Shown here: positions 27,260 to 31,967 of the stretch, piece by piece
How positions within the stretch are numbered: the stretch's first letter is position 1
Layout of the letters: the number at the start of each line of letters is the position of its first letter
IMG/VR virus record: IMGVR_UViG_3300047095_000752
Span: 124,001-188,000 of that record
Length of the DNA stretch: 64,000 nucleotides
Reading direction: 5' to 3' (one strand)
The notes under the pieces: model-generated
Seen by the model: the letters and a program-made list of their open reading frames with translations, nothing else
What the model was told of the DNA's origin: nothing
Databases searched by the model: none
Translations under genes and position numbers: made by a program

Positions 27260-27706
27260 TTATTTAACTTCAATTTTTATAGTATTGTCTTTGATTTCTT
27301 TTTGGCTGAATCCTAAGTATAGAATACCGTTATCCAGACTGTTTAACGACGGCTTATCAGCAACGTAGTTCGAGTTAATTTTAACTGTATAGTAATACTC
27401 TTTTGGTTTTGTCGATTCTTTAGAGTTGTAGTGTGGATTCGATACTATACCACGTACACTCAATTGATGATTCGATTTATTATATTGTACCGAGATGTCT
27501 TCTTTACGCACACCGGGTAACTCAAATGCGTACATGAGTTGTTTAGTGCCTTCACAAAAAGCCGTGGTGACGCCGTCTGGGTTGTAAACGTCTCCGTTTA
27601 ACACCGACTCTGGATTTGTGAACCACGCATCGAAACGGTCTAATTGGTTGAACATATCCTTTACTGGATTTAAATTTTTATGACGATTGTAAATATCTAC
27701 CCACAT
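27260..27706 (-). CDS. Small heat-shock protein (Hsp20 / alpha-crystallin)
   Basis: ELPGVRKEDISV...LSVRG...LDNGILYL. Confidence 0.88.
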   Translation of the reverse strand: MWVDIYNRHKNLNPVKDMFNQLDRFDAWFTNPESVLNGDVYNPDGVTTAFCEGTKQLMYAFELPGVRKEDISVQYNKSNHQLSVRGIVSNPHYNSKESTKPKEYYYTVKINSNYVADKPSLNSLDNGILYLGFSQKEIKDNTIKIEVK

Positions 27707-27785
27707 GATTATATCTCCTTTTTGGTTGGGTTTTAAAGTTAAACTAAAATTACAGCTTCCAGATGTTGGAAGCTGTATACATTAT

Positions 27786-27905
27786 AGCATTTGCCGTGCC
27801 AAAATGCAAATTTAGTTGTAACATGTTGATATAATTAGACTTATGATTTTTCTATATATTTGTGGATATAATATTCGCTCTATATTGAAACGGCAACTGT
27901 TTCAA
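27786..27905 (-). promoter_or_regulatory. Sigma54 promoter with IHF site and palindromic UAS upstream of hsp20
   Basis: TGGCACGGCAAATGCT (GG-N10-GC) at 27786-27801; TATCAAcatgTTA (WATCAANNNNTTR) at 27819-27831; TTGAAAC-N7-GTTTCAA at 27885-27905. Confidence 0.7.
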
Positions 27906-27915
27906 GGTGAAACGG

Positions 27916-28224
27916 TTAGTTTTTAAATTCTTTTACAATCTTATTGAATTTTCGGTTTATGGATCTTTGGTTTTCAGATTTAAATAATACTATCTCTTTT
28001 ATCTTTTTTACTACGGTTTTATCTACATGCTTTTGTTTTTTGTTTTTTACTTTTATATTAAAATTCCCAATAAAAGAATTTATTTTAGACTGTTTGTTGA
28101 GGGTGCAGACTGATATTGATACTGAGTACTTAAACTCTGAATCCGCCACACATTCGGGTAATTCCGTTATACTTAATATCTCATACTCTACATTAATTTG
28201 CTCTCTCATAGTACAAATCCTCAT
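27916..28224 (-). CDS. Hypothetical protein
   Basis: ORF preceded by both recurrent motifs. Confidence 0.5.
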   Translation of the reverse strand: MRICTMREQINVEYEILSITELPECVADSEFKYSVSISVCTLNKQSKINSFIGNFNIKVKNKKQKHVDKTVVKKIKEIVLFKSENQRSINRKFNKIVKEFKN

Positions 28225-28291
28225 ATTAAAAAAATAAATATATTTCTATACTCAATATTTAATATATATAATGTCTTTATATAAATTTGTC

Positions 28292-28678
28292 CTACGATTT
28301 GGCTTTGTAGTACTTTATACCAAGTTTGTCTAGCTCCGATTTTAACAATTGAATTCGCTCTTCGGAACTACTACAACAATCATTCTTTGTAATTGTATTT
28401 GAAACTCGGGTTGAATTCCAACCATATACTTTTCGCATTATACTAAGTGTGGTCATCTTTTGCTTTGAATTTTTATTTTCACACAGATTATATGTTATAC
28501 CATCGTCACCCTTTGGTTCCGAGTTTCTCAATATTGACTTTGATATTCCAGCTTTATTTATTAAAAACCCAACTAGACATTGACAGTCATCTTTATCGCA
28601 GAAGCTGCCTTTTATAAGCTTATCAGGTAACTGAACACGGGACGGCTTCTTGAGTGTGGGGGCTTTGACTGTTTTCAT
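28292..28678 (-). CDS. Hypothetical protein
   Basis: AAGGA RBS; CQCLVG motif. Confidence 0.55.
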   Translation of the reverse strand: MKTVKAPTLKKPSRVQLPDKLIKGSFCDKDDCQCLVGFLINKAGISKSILRNSEPKGDDGITYNLCENKNSKQKMTTLSIMRKVYGWNSTRVSNTITKNDCCSSSEERIQLLKSELDKLGIKYYKAKS

Positions 28679-29624
28679 TTTCGTATTCCTTTAGTCTAAG
28701 GTTAAACCAAGTGAGAAATTCATCTTGGTTGTATTTGGCTCTCTTGTCTGAGTTCTCGGTTCTTGTGATTATTCTTAAGTTTTCTCTTAAGTTGCAAATG
28801 GATTTGATTATGGCTTTATCATATTTTATGTCAAAATCGTTATCAACGAAAGCCGCTCGCGGAAATATATGATCCACTTCGTAAATATTTCTGAGATCGT
28901 GACGATGCTTTCTATTGTGTTTTGCTAGATATTTATTATTTAAAAAATCATTGTAGTTTGGATCATCTGATAGAATGTGAATTTGACTGTGGTGAAATGA
29001 TAAAAATTTTCGGCGAATATCTCTGGTCCGATCTATATTCCATCTCGTGTGGTTTTCACCTGATATACTTTTATAAAAACATTCTCTACATTTATAACCA
29101 TATTGAAAATCCCCAAATGTACGTTCAGATTTATGACCAGCCGGGCATTTCATTTCAAGTTTTGTATTAGCGTTTTTATATTCAGTGCTTAATAGAATAT
29201 AACCTGTAGATTCGATTGTTGATTTAACGTGTTCATATGAATGTTTTACTAAACCTGCGCATATCTTACATCTATTATTGTTATCTTTAAAACTATTAAA
29301 TATAACATCGTATGTATGATCTTTTGGGCATTTAACTGTTAATTTACTACAATTATTTTCATACACTCCCGATATATATTTATAACCTTTTGACTCTATA
29401 TAATTTATAACATCGTTTATATCTAATTTTCGTTTATTTAAACTGCATTGTTTACATCTACGTCCCGCTTTAAAATTGTTGTATATGGAGTAAAATATAT
29501 GATCATCGGGACATTTAATCTTTAGTTTATCACTATTTTTGGTATATGTTTTACTTAGTAGTTTATACCCGCTTTCTTTTTCAATTTCATTTTTAACATA
29601 TTCGTATTCTAATTTCTTAGGCAT
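28623..29624 (-). CDS. Zinc-finger-repeat HNH homing endonuclease (3 repeats)
   Basis: Three CPxxH..RCxxC repeats; DHIFPR...ICNLRENLRI. Confidence 0.8.
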   Translation of the reverse strand: MPKKLEYEYVKNEIEKESGYKLLSKTYTKNSDKLKIKCPDDHIFYSIYNNFKAGRRCKQCSLNKRKLDINDVINYIESKGYKYISGVYENNCSKLTVKCPKDHTYDVIFNSFKDNNNRCKICAGLVKHSYEHVKSTIESTGYILLSTEYKNANTKLEMKCPAGHKSERTFGDFQYGYKCRECFYKSISGENHTRWNIDRTRDIRRKFLSFHHSQIHILSDDPNYNDFLNNKYLAKHNRKHRHDLRNIYEVDHIFPRAAFVDNDFDIKYDKAIIKSICNLRENLRIITRTENSDKRAKYNQDEFLTWFNLRLKEYENENSQSPHTQEAVPCSVT

Positions 29625-31967
29625 TTATATCACTCCGTTGTCACTCAGATAATCTCCGATCAAGATGAACATACTGTCAGTATCGCCGTATGCAACATAT
29701 GGTAGATCGGAATTCTCAAAGTGTTCGATGTAGGATGTTTTAATAGTTGAATCATCCGTCTGTAAATAATTTGAAAGATGATATACGGAAAATTTAAGGG
29801 CTTCTTGACCTGTGCTGGTGATCGCTTTCGCCATATCTAGATTGTACATACGGAAAAATGGCAACCCCAGGATCCCATAAATGCTATTGCTGACAATTTT
29901 ATAACTGCTCTGTTTATTATCAAATTGCTTTAATTCTACCTTCATCCGCTCCTTAGTCACAGGATCCAGATCCGTATTTGTATTAATTTCTTGTCTAAGA
30001 TCGCCTAATTTCTTTTTATAAAGATCGCGCTGATCGCCCAAGTGAGTTAACACTTCGTGGAAGAATGATAGCTCAACTTCATGTTGAACAAAAAGGCATC
30101 CATTAATCGTTATAATATAATCATTCTTTACTATGAATTCTTCAAACTCAGCCGGAGTTAAATATATATCTTCGCTGGATCTAAGGATCGGATTAAGTGT
30201 AACCTTAATTTGATCCGGTAGTTGTGATTTTTTATATAGATATGAATATGCGTCTTTTTCTGACACTTTACCTTTGTATGTATTAGGTCCTATATTCATA
30301 GATTGAATTATTGATGGATACAGTGATTTAAAGTCAAAATCGACAACCCACTGGTGAACACCTACCTTTGGTTCCAGTACATATGCCCCTGAGAATGTCG
30401 CGTGATTTTGTTTTATTGAATTTCTGCATACTAAATTCTTATCCTTAGCGAACTTCAATAGAATTGGATCAACAAGACCAGATGTGGTCTCAGCCCGTCT
30501 CCAAGTACTACTACAAGTCTTTATAAGTTCAAATCGCAAATCTATATGGTGGAGAGCGTCTTCAAGTTCAGATAGCAGTACAGTATCAACCCCAGAATAT
30601 AATATAAACTTAACAAGATCACTTTCGTACATAGTATTAATGGTACCTTCAAAAGCGACTTTACCTTCACCCAGTACCTTCTGTGATATATTATTTAATT
30701 TATAACTTTCTTCTACATTTTGCGTAAGTTTTTTATATATTGCTAATTGGTCTACCATATATAGACCATATACTGTCGTCCCATAATATTCACTTATGTC
30801 AACATCAGCAAGTCCGATTGGAGACAATGAATCTACATCCAATCCCAATTTATGCATGCGATTTACTGTATAGGGCACATCGAATAGCTCTGAATTCCAC
30901 CCCGCCCAAACATCAGGATCGAGTTCTTTTGCTTTTTCTATAAATGCCGTTATAAGATCAGCTTCTGAGTCAAAAATCTTTATAATATATTCATTAATCT
31001 CTGGGAACACGCTTAAATTATCATATAAGCTCTTATGCCCTTTATTGTATGATGTTGTGTCCATTTCAGGTAGTTGTAGAATATAGACGTGTGTAGCCCC
31101 ATCACTGTCCAGTTTAAAAGATATCGAGTTAATCGGGAACTCAGCTTCAAGAGCGAATGGAAATGCTTTATGTTGTCCGGTATACACTTCAATATCCCAG
31201 TATAGTATCTTTAATTTATACTGGCATTCCGGTTCAGTTCTATTGTAATAATAGTCAATAGAATGTTTAATATCCGGTTTAACATCTTCTTCGTACATCG
31301 CTGTAGTTGGGAGAAGTCCAACTTTGGTTGTATGTAACTGTACGTCGGATACCTTCTTTATTATATCACTGTCTCTAATGTCCATAGGTACTGAATAGAA
31401 ATAAGTATCTTTTGAATTTACTGTGTGGTATTTTTTAGTTCCATTTGCATCTCTAAACACATATAGAATCTTACTTTTAAACTTATTGTATTGTATGTCA
31501 ATTAATATGTGATTTGAATCGTAACACCAATCGGGTAGTTTAAACGAGTGACATTTTGCTTCTTCATTTGTAACGACTGTGTTTATACTCTTTTCTCTAT
31601 TTTTAAAGTATAATTTAGATATGGTAGTAAATTGCTCTTCTACGAACGAATAGAAAAAGTCCAATTCACTACATACCTCGTCTAGATCATAAGTGATCAT
31701 CAACTTTATATCTTTATATTTAATACCTTTACCTACAACAGACTCAAACTTATCACCCAACTCGTCGTTAAACGTTTTCGTCACACCCTCCCCCATAATT
31801 ACAGTGAGTGTAGCATCTGTAGCTTTGATGTGATCTTCGGTTAGCTTACTTGTTGGATATATTTTATGATCTATCTTATCGAAGTTGTTAGTCTTCAAGA
31901 TCTTTTTGAATAACTTATTTTTTATAGTTTCTTGATTTGCATAAATTGCAATTGGAATTGAAGCCAC
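29625..31967 (-). CDS. Family B DNA polymerase, N-terminal subunit (UDG-like domain, 3'-5' exonuclease, palm motifs A-C)
   Basis: WDIEV (ExoI), GWNSELFD (ExoII), YSGVD (ExoIII), DFKSLYPS (A), KIVSNSIYG (B), YGDTDS (C); stop 15 aa after DTDS. Confidence 0.92.
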   Translation of the reverse strand: MASIPIAIYANQETIKNKLFKKILKTNNFDKIDHKIYPTSKLTEDHIKATDATLTVIMGEGVTKTFNDELGDKFESVVGKGIKYKDIKLMITYDLDEVCSELDFFYSFVEEQFTTISKLYFKNREKSINTVVTNEEAKCHSFKLPDWCYDSNHILIDIQYNKFKSKILYVFRDANGTKKYHTVNSKDTYFYSVPMDIRDSDIIKKVSDVQLHTTKVGLLPTTAMYEEDVKPDIKHSIDYYYNRTEPECQYKLKILYWDIEVYTGQHKAFPFALEAEFPINSISFKLDSDGATHVYILQLPEMDTTSYNKGHKSLYDNLSVFPEINEYIIKIFDSEADLITAFIEKAKELDPDVWAGWNSELFDVPYTVNRMHKLGLDVDSLSPIGLADVDISEYYGTTVYGLYMVDQLAIYKKLTQNVEESYKLNNISQKVLGEGKVAFEGTINTMYESDLVKFILYSGVDTVLLSELEDALHHIDLRFELIKTCSSTWRRAETTSGLVDPILLKFAKDKNLVCRNSIKQNHATFSGAYVLEPKVGVHQWVVDFDFKSLYPSIIQSMNIGPNTYKGKVSEKDAYSYLYKKSQLPDQIKVTLNPILRSSEDIYLTPAEFEEFIVKNDYIITINGCLFVQHEVELSFFHEVLTHLGDQRDLYKKKLGDLRQEINTNTDLDPVTKERMKVELKQFDNKQSSYKIVSNSIYGILGLPFFRMYNLDMAKAITSTGQEALKFSVYHLSNYLQTDDSTIKTSYIEHFENSDLPYVAYGDTDSMFILIGDYLSDNGVI

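What the first reader, a model, noticed from the sequence alone, without database searches (positions are those of the whole stretch)
27751..27915. Complete host-type sigma54 enhancer-dependent promoter driving phage Hsp20
Seen on the minus strand, in canonical order and spacing: palindromic UAS TTGAAAC-N7-GTTTCAA (plus a half site GTGAAAC), IHF consensus, -24/-12 box TGGCACG-N4-ATGCT, then an 11-bp 5' UTR hairpin (27751-27777) and the hsp20 RBS. Known: sigma54 needs a bacterial enhancer-binding protein at a UAS, often with IHF bending, and some bacterial sHsp genes are sigma54-dependent. Inference: the phage wires its chaperone into a host stress-sensing bEBP circuit, which is rarely described for phages and narrows the host to sigma54/IHF-using Gram-negatives.
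Basis: partly seen in the sequence, partly recalled or inferred. Interest (0 to 1): 0.65.

Follow-up and report, generated by a model that had tools for sequence, protein, structure and literature searches.

The report
Conserved sigma-54 promoter on phage hsp20
A large T4-like lake phage and five related phage contigs keep, upstream of their small heat-shock gene, the parts of a bacterial sigma-54 promoter (-24/-12 box, IHF bend site, upstream dyad) plus a 5' RNA hairpin, which suggests the phage chaperone is switched on through a host enhancer-binding protein, an arrangement rarely described in phages.

Summary
Taken alone, the sigma-54 box (one mismatch to TGGCACG-N4-TTGCW) is only weakly unusual: 0.39 such sites are expected per genome. 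The evidence comes from comparison.

I recovered five syntenic relatives from metagenomes, one of them distant (L090). Across the six sequences, 143 of 225 intergenic columns vary. Even so:
- **Sigma-54 core:** TGGCA...TGCT and its GG-N10-GC spacing are invariant.
- **IHF core:** TATCAA-N4-TTA is invariant, sits at a fixed 30-nt offset, and has a freely varying N4.
- **Hairpin:** an 11-bp hairpin starts 10 nt after the GC in every sequence, with compensatory changes and complete sequence turnover in L090.
- **Upstream dyad:** a dyad is centred near -120 in all six.

The overlapping sigma-70 reading (TGcTATAAT) is real in the window. However, its -35 is not conserved and its last T is lost in L090.

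The conserved core inside it is AACAG-N3-CYGTT.

Both promoter readings predict the same start (27774-27775), so TSS mapping cannot separate them. The 245-kb record contains no rpoN or bEBP, and the host is unknown.

Verdict: the sigma-54/IHF reading is probably right (about 0.65), possibly sharing the site with a sigma-70 promoter. Function is untested.

The parts
27260..27706 (-). hsp20 gene (148 aa, alpha-crystallin small heat-shock protein)
   Evidence: ORF. Pfam HSP20 E = 7.5e-4, 20.0 bits against a cut-off of 20.8. A profile of three phage homologues against PDB hits Hsp16 at 2e-7, and also Hsp21 and Hsp16.5.
27715..27720 (-). Shine-Dalgarno AAGGAG, 8 nt before the ATG
   Evidence: AAAGGAGATATA is invariant in the five close sequences. 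47% of the phage's genes have such a motif, against 6% in a control.
27741..27750 (-). U-rich tail ATTTTAGTTT after the hairpin
   Evidence: Flagged terminator-like together with the hairpin. TGTAATTTTAGT is invariant in five sequences. L090 has AGTTTTAA at the same place.
27751..27777 (-). Conserved 11-bp stem-loop at the predicted 5' end of the hsp20 transcript
   Evidence: -21.4 kcal/mol for the UTR, z = -3.3. Of 11 pairs, 2 show compensatory changes, 1 is U-A to U-G and none is broken; the loop varies freely. L090 has an 11-bp stem of unrelated sequence at the same offset.
27786..27801 (-). Sigma-54 type -24/-12 element TGGCACG-GCAA-ATGCT; predicted +1 at 27775
   Evidence: It is the only site of this quality in the genome. 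TGGCA and TGCT are invariant in six sequences while the spacer positions read GCAA/GTAA/ACAA/TTAA/ACAA/CGAG.
27781..27789 (-). Overlapping extended -10 of a sigma-70 type promoter (TGcTATAAT); predicted +1 at about 27774
   Evidence: 10 of 12 matches plus TG. The phage has a class of such promoters. The hexamer reads TATACT in L025 and TATATA in L090.
27804..27809 (-). -35-like TTGCAT, 17 nt from TATAAT; not conserved
   Evidence: 3 of 6 positions vary among five sequences and 5 of 6 among six.
27819..27831 (-). IHF-type core TATCAA-CATG-TTA, centred near -50
   Evidence: Exact match to WATCAANNNNTTR. The 9 specified positions are invariant in six sequences, the N4 reads CATG/TAGG/TAAG/TAAC/TAGG/ATAC, and the core is always 30 nt upstream of TGGCA.
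27889..27901 (-).
   Evidence: AACAG-N3-CTGTT in L026, L002, L025 and L029, with N3 varying. AACAA-N2-CTGTT in L090 with the same centre.
27911..27915 (-). Third half site CCGTT, 9 nt upstream of AACAG
   Evidence: It reads CCGTT, CTGTT or TTGTT in the five close sequences (YYGTT). L090 instead has CTGTT-N9-AACAG on the other side of the dyad.
27916..28224 (-). Upstream gene ORF102 (no family hit); its stop codon directly abuts the regulatory region
   Evidence: Homologues at 83-97% identity sit in the same position in the relatives.
28275..28292 (-). Copy of the phage's own promoter motif GGACAAAT-TTA-TATAAAG, serving ORF102
   Evidence: 21 oriented intergenic copies lie 15-90 nt from start codons. 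GGACAAAT is 22-fold enriched upstream of genes.

Best explanation
The 209-nt spacer before hsp20 carries a host-type, enhancer-dependent sigma-54 promoter that this phage lineage has maintained.

**Proposed mechanism**
- Host RNA polymerase with sigma-54 binds TGGCACG-N4-ATGCT (27801-27786) as a closed complex.
- An IHF-like protein bends the DNA at TATCAA-N4-TTA (centre about -50).
- A host enhancer-binding ATPase, bound to the CYGTT/AACAG half sites centred about -120, opens the complex.
- Transcription starts at about 27775, at the base of a conserved 11-bp stem-loop. That stem-loop most likely protects the 5' end of the mRNA, and may also stop read-through from ORF102.

In the window's sub-lineage an extended -10 sigma-70 promoter (TGcTATAAT) shares the same start point, so the site may be dual.

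**Shown:** the motifs, their spacing and their conservation pattern.
**Inferred:** which proteins bind, dependence on rpoN, which activator is involved, and what signal it senses.
For: 1. **Motif quality.** The box has one mismatch to the consensus and is unique in 245 kb. That equals the median of the 18 validated E. coli promoters listed in PMC2831329 (the mismatches are my count). Three of those promoters also have ATGC at the -12 box.
2. **Conservation in close relatives.** Five sequences show third-position divergence of 0.29-0.58 in the flanking genes. All 11 consensus-matching sigma-54 positions are invariant (3 of 194 mask placements do as well). When at least 3 of the 5 free positions are also required to vary, only the true placement qualifies (1 of 194). 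The IHF mask gives the same result (4 of 197, then 1 of 197).
3. **Conservation in a distant relative.** L090 is syntenic. It keeps TGGCAT-N5-ATGCT with GG-N10-GC, the IHF core exactly 30 nt upstream, a dyad at the same centre, and a hairpin starting 10 nt after the GC. It loses the -35-like hexamer and the last T of the -10. With six sequences and 64% of columns variable, the sigma-54 core and the IHF core are each the single best-conserved placement (1 of 210 and 1 of 213).
4. **Spacing.** In the five close relatives there are no indels between the dyad, the IHF core and the promoter, although up to 66 of 209 positions are substituted. L090 differs there by two single-base gaps in the six-sequence alignment.
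5. **Singleton status.** The site belongs to neither of the phage's two repeated promoter classes.
6. **Precedent.**
   - E. coli ibpB has a sigma-54 promoter (PMC2831329).
   - The Flavobacterium psychrophilum chaperone regulon is sigma-54 driven (PMC9723704).
   - Pseudomonas phage YuA has a sigma-54-like promoter (PMC10914365).
Against: - The host is unknown, so the presence of rpoN, IHF and a matching activator cannot be checked.
- The phage record has no rpoN, no bEBP AAA+ domain and no HU/IHF.
- A perfect extended -10 sigma-70 element overlaps the box. The phage clearly uses that promoter type, including one promoter with the same '-10, 3 nt, hairpin, U-run' geometry.
- Genome-wide, one site of this quality is not rare by chance (p about 0.3).
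- The whole 100-nt block is strongly conserved in four of the five relatives, so most of the discriminating power rests on L025 and L090.
- A scan of 185,579 species genomes for the dyad plus a sigma-54 box gave 50 hits, which is chance level, and none lay next to hsp20.
- A more distant viral hsp20 (L027/L038) has TTTGGCA upstream but the wrong spacing (GG-N9-GC, or GA in place of GC).
Confidence: 0.65

Rival explanations
1. This is an ordinary host sigma-70 promoter of the extended -10 type (TTGCAT-N17-TGcTATAAT), one of the phage's early promoters. The sigma-54 and IHF likenesses are incidental.
For: -: 10 of 12 matches plus TG.
- TTG-N17-TGnTAnnnT is about ten-fold enriched upstream of genes (8 found, 0.8 expected).
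- the promoter at genome 76886 (-) has the same layout of -10, 3 nt, hairpin and U-run.
- The key -10 positions and the TG are invariant in the five close sequences.
Against: - The -35 hexamer varies at 5 of 6 positions.
- The -10 becomes TATATA in L090, losing the final T.
- This reading does not explain why TTGGCA inside the spacer is invariant.
- It also does not explain why an exact IHF core is kept at a fixed distance while its N4 varies.
- The whole sigma-70 mask is no better conserved than average (74 of 181 placements do as well).
Confidence: 0.17
2. The conserved TGGCA-N7-TGCTA is an imperfect dyad operator for an unknown phage or host regulator, sitting on a weak promoter. It is not a sigma-54 site.
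For: - TGGCA and the reverse complement of TGCTA (TAGCA) match at 4 of 5 positions in all six sequences.
- The distant viral hsp20 in L027 has a perfect TGGCA-N6-TGCCA upstream, followed by a hairpin.
Against: - The same asymmetry is kept in all six sequences.
- The spacing differs from L027, and L038 loses the right arm.
- No second copy of the motif exists in 245 kb.
- This reading leaves L090 without a recognisable promoter.
- The letters and spacing fit the sigma-54 consensus exactly.
Confidence: 0.1
3. There is no dedicated promoter. The hairpin plus U-run is the terminator of the ORF102 unit, and hsp20 is made by read-through from the GGACAAAT promoter at 28292.
For: - The hairpin and tail meet the terminator pattern.
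- ORF102 has its own promoter 67 nt upstream of its start codon.
Against: - The hairpin lies 140 nt after the ORF102 stop codon, with conserved promoter-like blocks in between.
- Its U-run is weaker than those of the phage's typical terminators.
- The same promoter-then-hairpin layout follows a textbook sigma-70 promoter elsewhere in the genome.
- The fixed 10-nt offset from the GC in L090 points to a transcript start there.
Confidence: 0.05

Closest known systems
IHF-assisted, bEBP-activated sigma-54 promoters of Proteobacteria (for example nifH, Pu, pspA, glnHp2)
   Same: The order and distances match: an enhancer dyad about 120 nt upstream, an IHF core in between, and GG-N10-GC at -24/-12. 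The spacing is strictly kept among the relatives.
   Different: It sits in a lytic-type T4-like phage genome that encodes neither sigma-54, IHF nor an activator. The enhancer half site (CYGTT/AACAG) matches no activator site that I can name. It is overlapped by an extended -10.
E. coli ibpB sigma-54 promoter (Kuczynska-Wisnik 2001, cited in PMC2831329), and the sigma-54 driven chaperone regulon of Flavobacterium psychrophilum (PMC9723704)
   Same: A small heat-shock or protein-quality-control gene is placed under sigma-54.
   Different: Those are cellular genes. The phage uses Shine-Dalgarno sites and TTGACA/TATAAT promoters, so a Bacteroidota host is unlikely. No sequence relationship to the ibpB promoter was found.
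Sigma-54-like promoter of Pseudomonas phage YuA (Ceyssens 2008, as cited in PMC10914365)
   Same: A phage promoter read by host sigma-54.
   Different: YuA is a siphovirus of a known host, and its promoter was found experimentally. Here the case is comparative only, with different phage type and different gene.
5'-terminal stem-loops that stabilise mRNAs (ompA type), and promoter-proximal intrinsic terminators
   Same: A GC-containing 11-bp hairpin lies at the very 5' end and is followed by a U-run.
   Different: Which of the two roles applies is not resolved. The Shine-Dalgarno site is not sequestered, so it is not a ROSE or fourU type thermometer. There is no Rfam match at gathering score.

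Membership tests
Sigma-54 (-24/-12) promoter | GG and GC doublets exactly 10 bp apart within TGGCAC-N5-TTGCW | tested here: met
   TGGCACG-GCAA-ATGCT has one mismatch. The same spacing is kept in all six relatives.
Sigma-54 (-24/-12) promoter | Intergenic, in the sense orientation, at a workable distance from the gene | tested here: met
   80 nt from the box to the ATG, in the only long (209-nt) spacer of this gene block.
Sigma-54 (-24/-12) promoter | Selective conservation of consensus positions compared with free positions | tested here: met
   Mask tests give 1 of 194 with five sequences and 1 of 210 with six.
Sigma-54 (-24/-12) promoter | Transcription depends on rpoN and on ATP hydrolysis by a bEBP | not testable with these tools
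   No host or culture is available. Two RNA-library read-length contigs lie only inside the coding sequence.
Sigma-54 (-24/-12) promoter | An activator (bEBP) and its upstream binding site exist | tested here: inconclusive
   A dyad conserved at about -120, plus a third half site. There is no PF00158 hit in the phage. No host regulon was found with the dyad.
IHF binding site | WATCAANNNNTTR core between enhancer and promoter | tested here: met
   Exact core at 27831-27819, about 0.02 expected by chance. The 9 specified positions are invariant and the N4 is free in six sequences. Binding itself was not tested.
Sigma-70 extended -10 promoter | TGnTATAAT with the first T, the second A and the last T kept; the -35 is optional | tested here: inconclusive
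   Perfect in the window and kept in four relatives. The last T is lost in L090 and the -35 is not conserved.
Intrinsic terminator | GC-rich hairpin followed directly by a U-run, placed at the end of a transcription unit | tested here: inconclusive
   The pattern is met. However, it lies 140 nt past the stop codon and directly after promoter elements, and its tail is weaker than those of the phage's usual terminators.
RNA thermometer (ROSE / fourU) | The Shine-Dalgarno site is paired in a conserved, weak helix | tested here: not met
   The consensus fold pairs only the 5' hairpin. The Shine-Dalgarno region is unpaired in the alignment fold. There is no Rfam hit at gathering score.
Hsp20 / alpha-crystallin | Alpha-crystallin domain | tested here: met
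   Pfam 20.0 bits (cut-off 20.8) for the single sequence. The profile against PDB gives E = 2e-7 to Hsp16 and hits other sHsps.
The phage's own promoter class (GGACAAAT-N3-TATAAA) | PWM score within the range of the 21 oriented intergenic copies (at least 14.9) | tested here: not met
   The best scores in the hsp20 upstream region range from -3.2 to 10.0 in the six sequences, and they fall at non-homologous places.

The most novel reading that the evidence does not exclude
A lineage of large, T4-like, apparently lytic freshwater phages has kept a complete host enhancer-dependent promoter (activator dyad, IHF bend, sigma-54 box) through deep sequence divergence. It drives a single gene, the phage's own small heat-shock protein. 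The phage would therefore read the state of a host stress-sensing AAA+ activator to decide when to make its chaperone. Bound sigma-54 holoenzyme might also gate an overlapping sigma-70 promoter.
Probability: 0.45. Interest if true: 0.7.

Novelty: new member of a known kind. Interest (0 to 1): 0.6.

Why it matters
Phage gene timing is usually explained by host sigma-70, phage sigma factors or phage polymerases. Use of the host's enhancer-dependent sigma-54 pathway is documented for very few phages. In the papers I could search, it has not been reported for T4-like or jumbo phages, nor for a phage chaperone gene.

If it is real:
- It shows a phage coupling one auxiliary gene to a host signal-sensing activator rather than to its own temporal programme.
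- It gives a sequence-based host clue: a host with rpoN and IHF that uses Shine-Dalgarno sites and has classical -35/-10 promoters.
- It offers a compact natural example of overlapping sigma-54 and sigma-70 promoters with a 5' stabilising hairpin.

Tried and rejected
**Searches for more relatives**
- Blastn and tblastn of the region and of Hsp20 against 50,697 phage records gave no match.
- The first IMG/VR scans gave no close relatives.
- The metagenome scan with the Hsp20 alignment returned only generic bacterial Hsp20s. None had a convincing sigma-54 box.
- The full HMMER search showed the clade is tiny: two close clusters, then a gap.
- Of the next-best Hsp20s:
  - L090 was informative.
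  - L093 has a sigma-54-like box with correct spacing but no context.
  - L091, L092, L094, L096 and L097 have none.

**Search for a host regulon**
- I scanned the species genomes for the dyad, then N72-102, then a sigma-54 box. There were 50 hits, about chance level. The taxa were diverse and none lay beside hsp20. This is uninformative, not evidence against the model.

**Reads**
- The two metatranscriptome runs hold one read-length contig each, both inside the coding sequence. They show no 5' ends.

**Ideas rejected**
- CIRCE, HAIR and a sigma-32 reading of CTTGAAA were rejected because the spacing is wrong or the letters are not conserved. The consensus sequences were recalled from memory.
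- Membership of the phage's GGACAAAT promoter class was rejected on PWM score.
- A Bacteroidota host, which would be attractive because its chaperone regulon is sigma-54 driven, was rejected on Shine-Dalgarno and promoter usage.

**Other dead ends**
- L027/L038 have TTTGGCA plus a hairpin upstream of hsp20, but the spacing is not sigma-54 compatible.
- The record behind L025 could not be opened for a wider scan.
- PHROGs gave nothing for the neighbouring genes.

Full report
**What the window is.**
The window is bases 124001-188000 of a 245,225-bp IMG/VR virus record, 78% complete by CheckV and 35% G+C. Its family-B DNA polymerase matches T4-like phages at under 30% identity. Near-identical DNA occurs in many lake-water metagenomes. 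So this is a large, distant T4-like freshwater phage whose host is unknown.

**Checking the observation.**
On the minus strand, a 209-nt spacer (27915-27707) separates the stop codon of ORF102 (27916) from the hsp20 start codon (27706).
- TTGAAAC-N7-GTTTCAA at 27905-27885, preceded by GTTTCAC.
- An exact IHF core, TATCAACATGTTA, at 27831-27819.
- TGGCACGGCAAATGCT at 27801-27786.
- An 11-bp hairpin at 27777-27751, followed by ATTTTAGTTT.
- AAGGAG at 27720-27715.

The gene is a genuine small heat-shock protein. A single-sequence Pfam search falls just under the cut-off, but a profile of three phage homologues hits solved sHsp structures at E = 2e-7.

A perfect extended -10 (TGcTATAAT, 27789-27781) overlaps the -12 box, with a weak -35 (TTGCAT) 17 nt upstream. 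With C27787 at -12, sigma-54 would start at 27775. The TATAAT would start at 27774 +/- 1.

**Chance, from this genome alone.**
- A box with one mismatch or fewer and GG/GC in place occurs once in the genome. 0.39 are expected, and 32% of random genomes have one. Being intergenic and correctly oriented brings the estimate to about 0.02-0.03.
- The IHF core occurs 29 times in the genome and 4 times between genes. About 0.02 are expected in the 85 nt concerned.
- The 7-N7-7 palindrome is not significant (p about 0.14).
- By my count from Table 1 of PMC2831329, one mismatch is the median for the 18 validated E. coli sigma-54 promoters. Three of them (zraP, hycA, fdhF) also read ATGC at the -12 box.

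**The phage's other promoters.**
Two repeated classes exist:
- **A phage-specific motif, GGACAAAT-N3-TATAAA.** There are 21 oriented copies lying 15-90 nt before start codons. One of them (28292-28275) serves ORF102.
- **A classical TTGACA-N17-TGnTATAAT class.** It is about ten-fold enriched upstream of genes.

The hsp20 site is a singleton. No other intergenic TGGCAC lies near a gene start, and the phage-motif PWM scores at most 10.0 there, against at least 14.9 for true copies. One sigma-70-type promoter (genome 76886, minus strand) has the same layout of -10, 3 nt, hairpin and U-run. This supports a transcript start at the hairpin base. It also keeps the sigma-70 reading alive for the window.

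**Comparative evidence.**
This is the decisive part. Word searches with Hsp20 and ORF102, followed by contig look-ups, gave four syntenic relatives: L026, L002, L029 and L025. The full HMMER search showed the clade is otherwise empty. Its next-best hit lies on L090, a distant but syntenic contig with the gene order hsp20, an ORF, then a dCMP-deaminase-like gene.

Divergence is substantial. Third-position differences at identical residues are 0.29-0.34 in ORF102 and 0.35-0.58 in hsp20. The Hsp20 proteins are only 42-58% identical.

*Five sequences (81 of 209 columns variable):*
- All 11 consensus-matching sigma-54 positions are invariant. The spacer reads GCAA, GTAA, ACAA, TTAA or ACAA, and the -15 base is A or G.
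- Only 3 of 194 placements of that mask are as conserved. Only the true placement also has at least 3 variable free positions.
- The IHF mask behaves the same way (4 of 197, then 1 of 197), with N4 reading CATG, TAGG, TAAG, TAAC or TAGG.
- The sigma-70 mask is unremarkable (74 of 181), and the -35 varies at 3 of 6 positions.
- There are no indels between the dyad and the promoter, although L025 differs at 66 of 209 positions.

*L090:*
- It keeps TGGCATC-CGAG-ATGCT with GG-N10-GC.
- It keeps TATCAA-ATAC-TTA exactly 30 nt upstream.
- It has an 11-bp hairpin of unrelated sequence starting 10 nt after the GC, then GUUUU.
- Its -35-like hexamer is gone.
- Its -10 reads TATATA, so the final T is lost.

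*Six sequences (143 of 225 columns variable):*
- TGGCA plus TGCT is the single fully invariant placement of its mask (1 of 210).
- The IHF core likewise (1 of 213).
- The -35 varies at 5 of 6 positions and the -10 at 2 of 6.

**The enhancer.**
The inner dyad is:
- AACAG-N3-CTGTT in four relatives.
- AACAG-TTG-CCGTT in the window.
- AACAA-N2-CTGTT in L090.

All share the same centre, near -120. A third half site lies 9 nt away, upstream in the window group and downstream in L090. The variable centre and the tolerated C/T fit a protein site better than an RNA stem. I could not assign it to any known activator. A scan of 185,579 species genomes for the dyad followed by a sigma-54 box gave only chance-level, unrelated hits.

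**The hairpin.**
Of its 11 pairs, two carry compensatory double changes, one changes from U-A to U-G, and none is broken. The loop is free to vary. L090 replaces the whole stem. The G-U pair argues for an RNA structure.

The hairpin does not sequester the Shine-Dalgarno site, so it is not a thermometer, and it has no Rfam family. Its position at +1, and the same design after another promoter, favour a 5'-end protective stem-loop. A role as an insulator or attenuator is not excluded. In that role it would be a terminator for ORF102 read-through, with a weaker U-run than the phage's usual terminators.

**Host and trans-acting factors.**
- The record has no rpoN, no bEBP AAA+ domain, no sigma-70 region 2, no HU/IHF and no psbA. 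It is only 78% complete, so absence is provisional.
- 47% of genes carry a Shine-Dalgarno motif (control 6%). Bacteroidota-type promoters are not enriched.
- The host is therefore probably not a Bacteroidota member, even though sigma-54 drives the chaperone regulon in that phylum (PMC9723704, PMC12316311).
- A proteobacterial host with rpoN and IHF is an inference, not a result.

**Expression.**
Two lake metatranscriptome runs each hold one read-length contig, and both lie inside hsp20. This is compatible with expression but says nothing about where the transcript starts.

**Comparison with known systems.**
The architecture is that of a standard IHF-assisted, activator-dependent sigma-54 promoter. 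Precedents are:
- E. coli ibpB (PMC2831329).
- Sigma-54 driven chaperone genes in Flavobacterium (PMC9723704).
- A sigma-54-like promoter in Pseudomonas phage YuA (PMC10914365).

I found no report linking sigma-54 to a phage hsp20 or to T4-like phages. I therefore rate it a new member of a known kind.

**Verdict.**
- The sigma-54/IHF interpretation is the best-supported explanation (about 0.65). The enhancer is redefined, and an overlapping sigma-70 element may also fire in the window's sub-lineage.
- A purely sigma-70 reading is at about 0.17, an unknown operator at about 0.10, and a read-through/terminator reading at about 0.05.
- Function is untested and the host is unidentified.

Noticed in passing
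window 28292-28275 (-) and 20 other places in the genome (for example window 522, 13257, 16974, 22112, 48041, 55210): A phage-specific promoter-like motif, (G)GACAAAT-N3-TATAAA, lies 15-90 nt upstream of start codons in the sense orientation. There are 21 copies, and GGACAAAT is 22-fold enriched upstream of genes. It resembles a T4-type late -10 with an added upstream block.
   Followed up: partly
genome 190293-190308 (+), i.e. 2.3 kb beyond the window's right end: A second, weaker sigma-54-like box, TGGTATG-TAAC-TTGCT (two mismatches). It is intergenic and lies 28 nt before a lone plus-strand gene for a 268-aa protein with a signal-peptide-like N-terminus. No IHF core or dyad was seen, and its conservation could not be checked.
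   Followed up: partly
window 27260-27706 compared with 27707-27810; L002, L025, L029: The Hsp20 proteins of relatives are only 42-58% identical. Yet the promoter/5'UTR block and the first seven codons (MWVDIYN) are almost unchanged. The coding body evolves fast, or is exchanged by recombination between conserved flanks.
   Followed up: partly
L027:1228-1345 (= L028) and L038:450-600: A very distant viral hsp20 (25% identity, no Shine-Dalgarno site) also has TTTGGCA(C/T) followed by a hairpin, and an upstream TTGTCA-N7-TGACAA dyad. However, GG-N9-GC in L027 and GA in place of GC in L038 do not fit sigma-54. This is unexplained.
   Followed up: partly
genome 76886-76826 (-) (outside the window), and window 595-546 (-): Other sigma-70-type promoters in this phage are also followed directly by a hairpin plus U-run before the gene. 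This looks like a recurrent 'promoter then 5' stem-loop' design.
   Followed up: partly
window 27865-27849 (-): A degenerate copy of the phage-specific motif (CCACAAAT-ATA-TAGAAA; PWM 10.0 against at least 14.9 for true copies) lies between the dyad and the IHF core. It is weaker in L026 and L029 and absent in L025 and L090.
   Followed up: yes
window 28623-31967 (-): The DNA polymerase ORF (780 aa) ends about 20 residues after its YGDTDS motif. An ORF with CapR-homology and weak HNH matches (333 aa) follows directly. This may be a polymerase gene split by a homing-endonuclease-like insertion. The same layout is seen in L025.
   Followed up: no
L093:333-348: Another of the nearest Hsp20 genes sits on a 1.5-kb contig of unknown origin with 34% G+C. 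It has CGGCATG-TCTT-ATGCA with correct GG-N10-GC spacing, 67 nt before its start codon.
   Followed up: partly
genome 13572-16862 (outside the window): A cluster of phage tRNA genes (Ile-TAT twice, Leu-TAA, Asn-GTT, Arg-TCT and one odd call). All read A/T-ending codons, which hints at a host with higher G+C than the phage.
   Followed up: no
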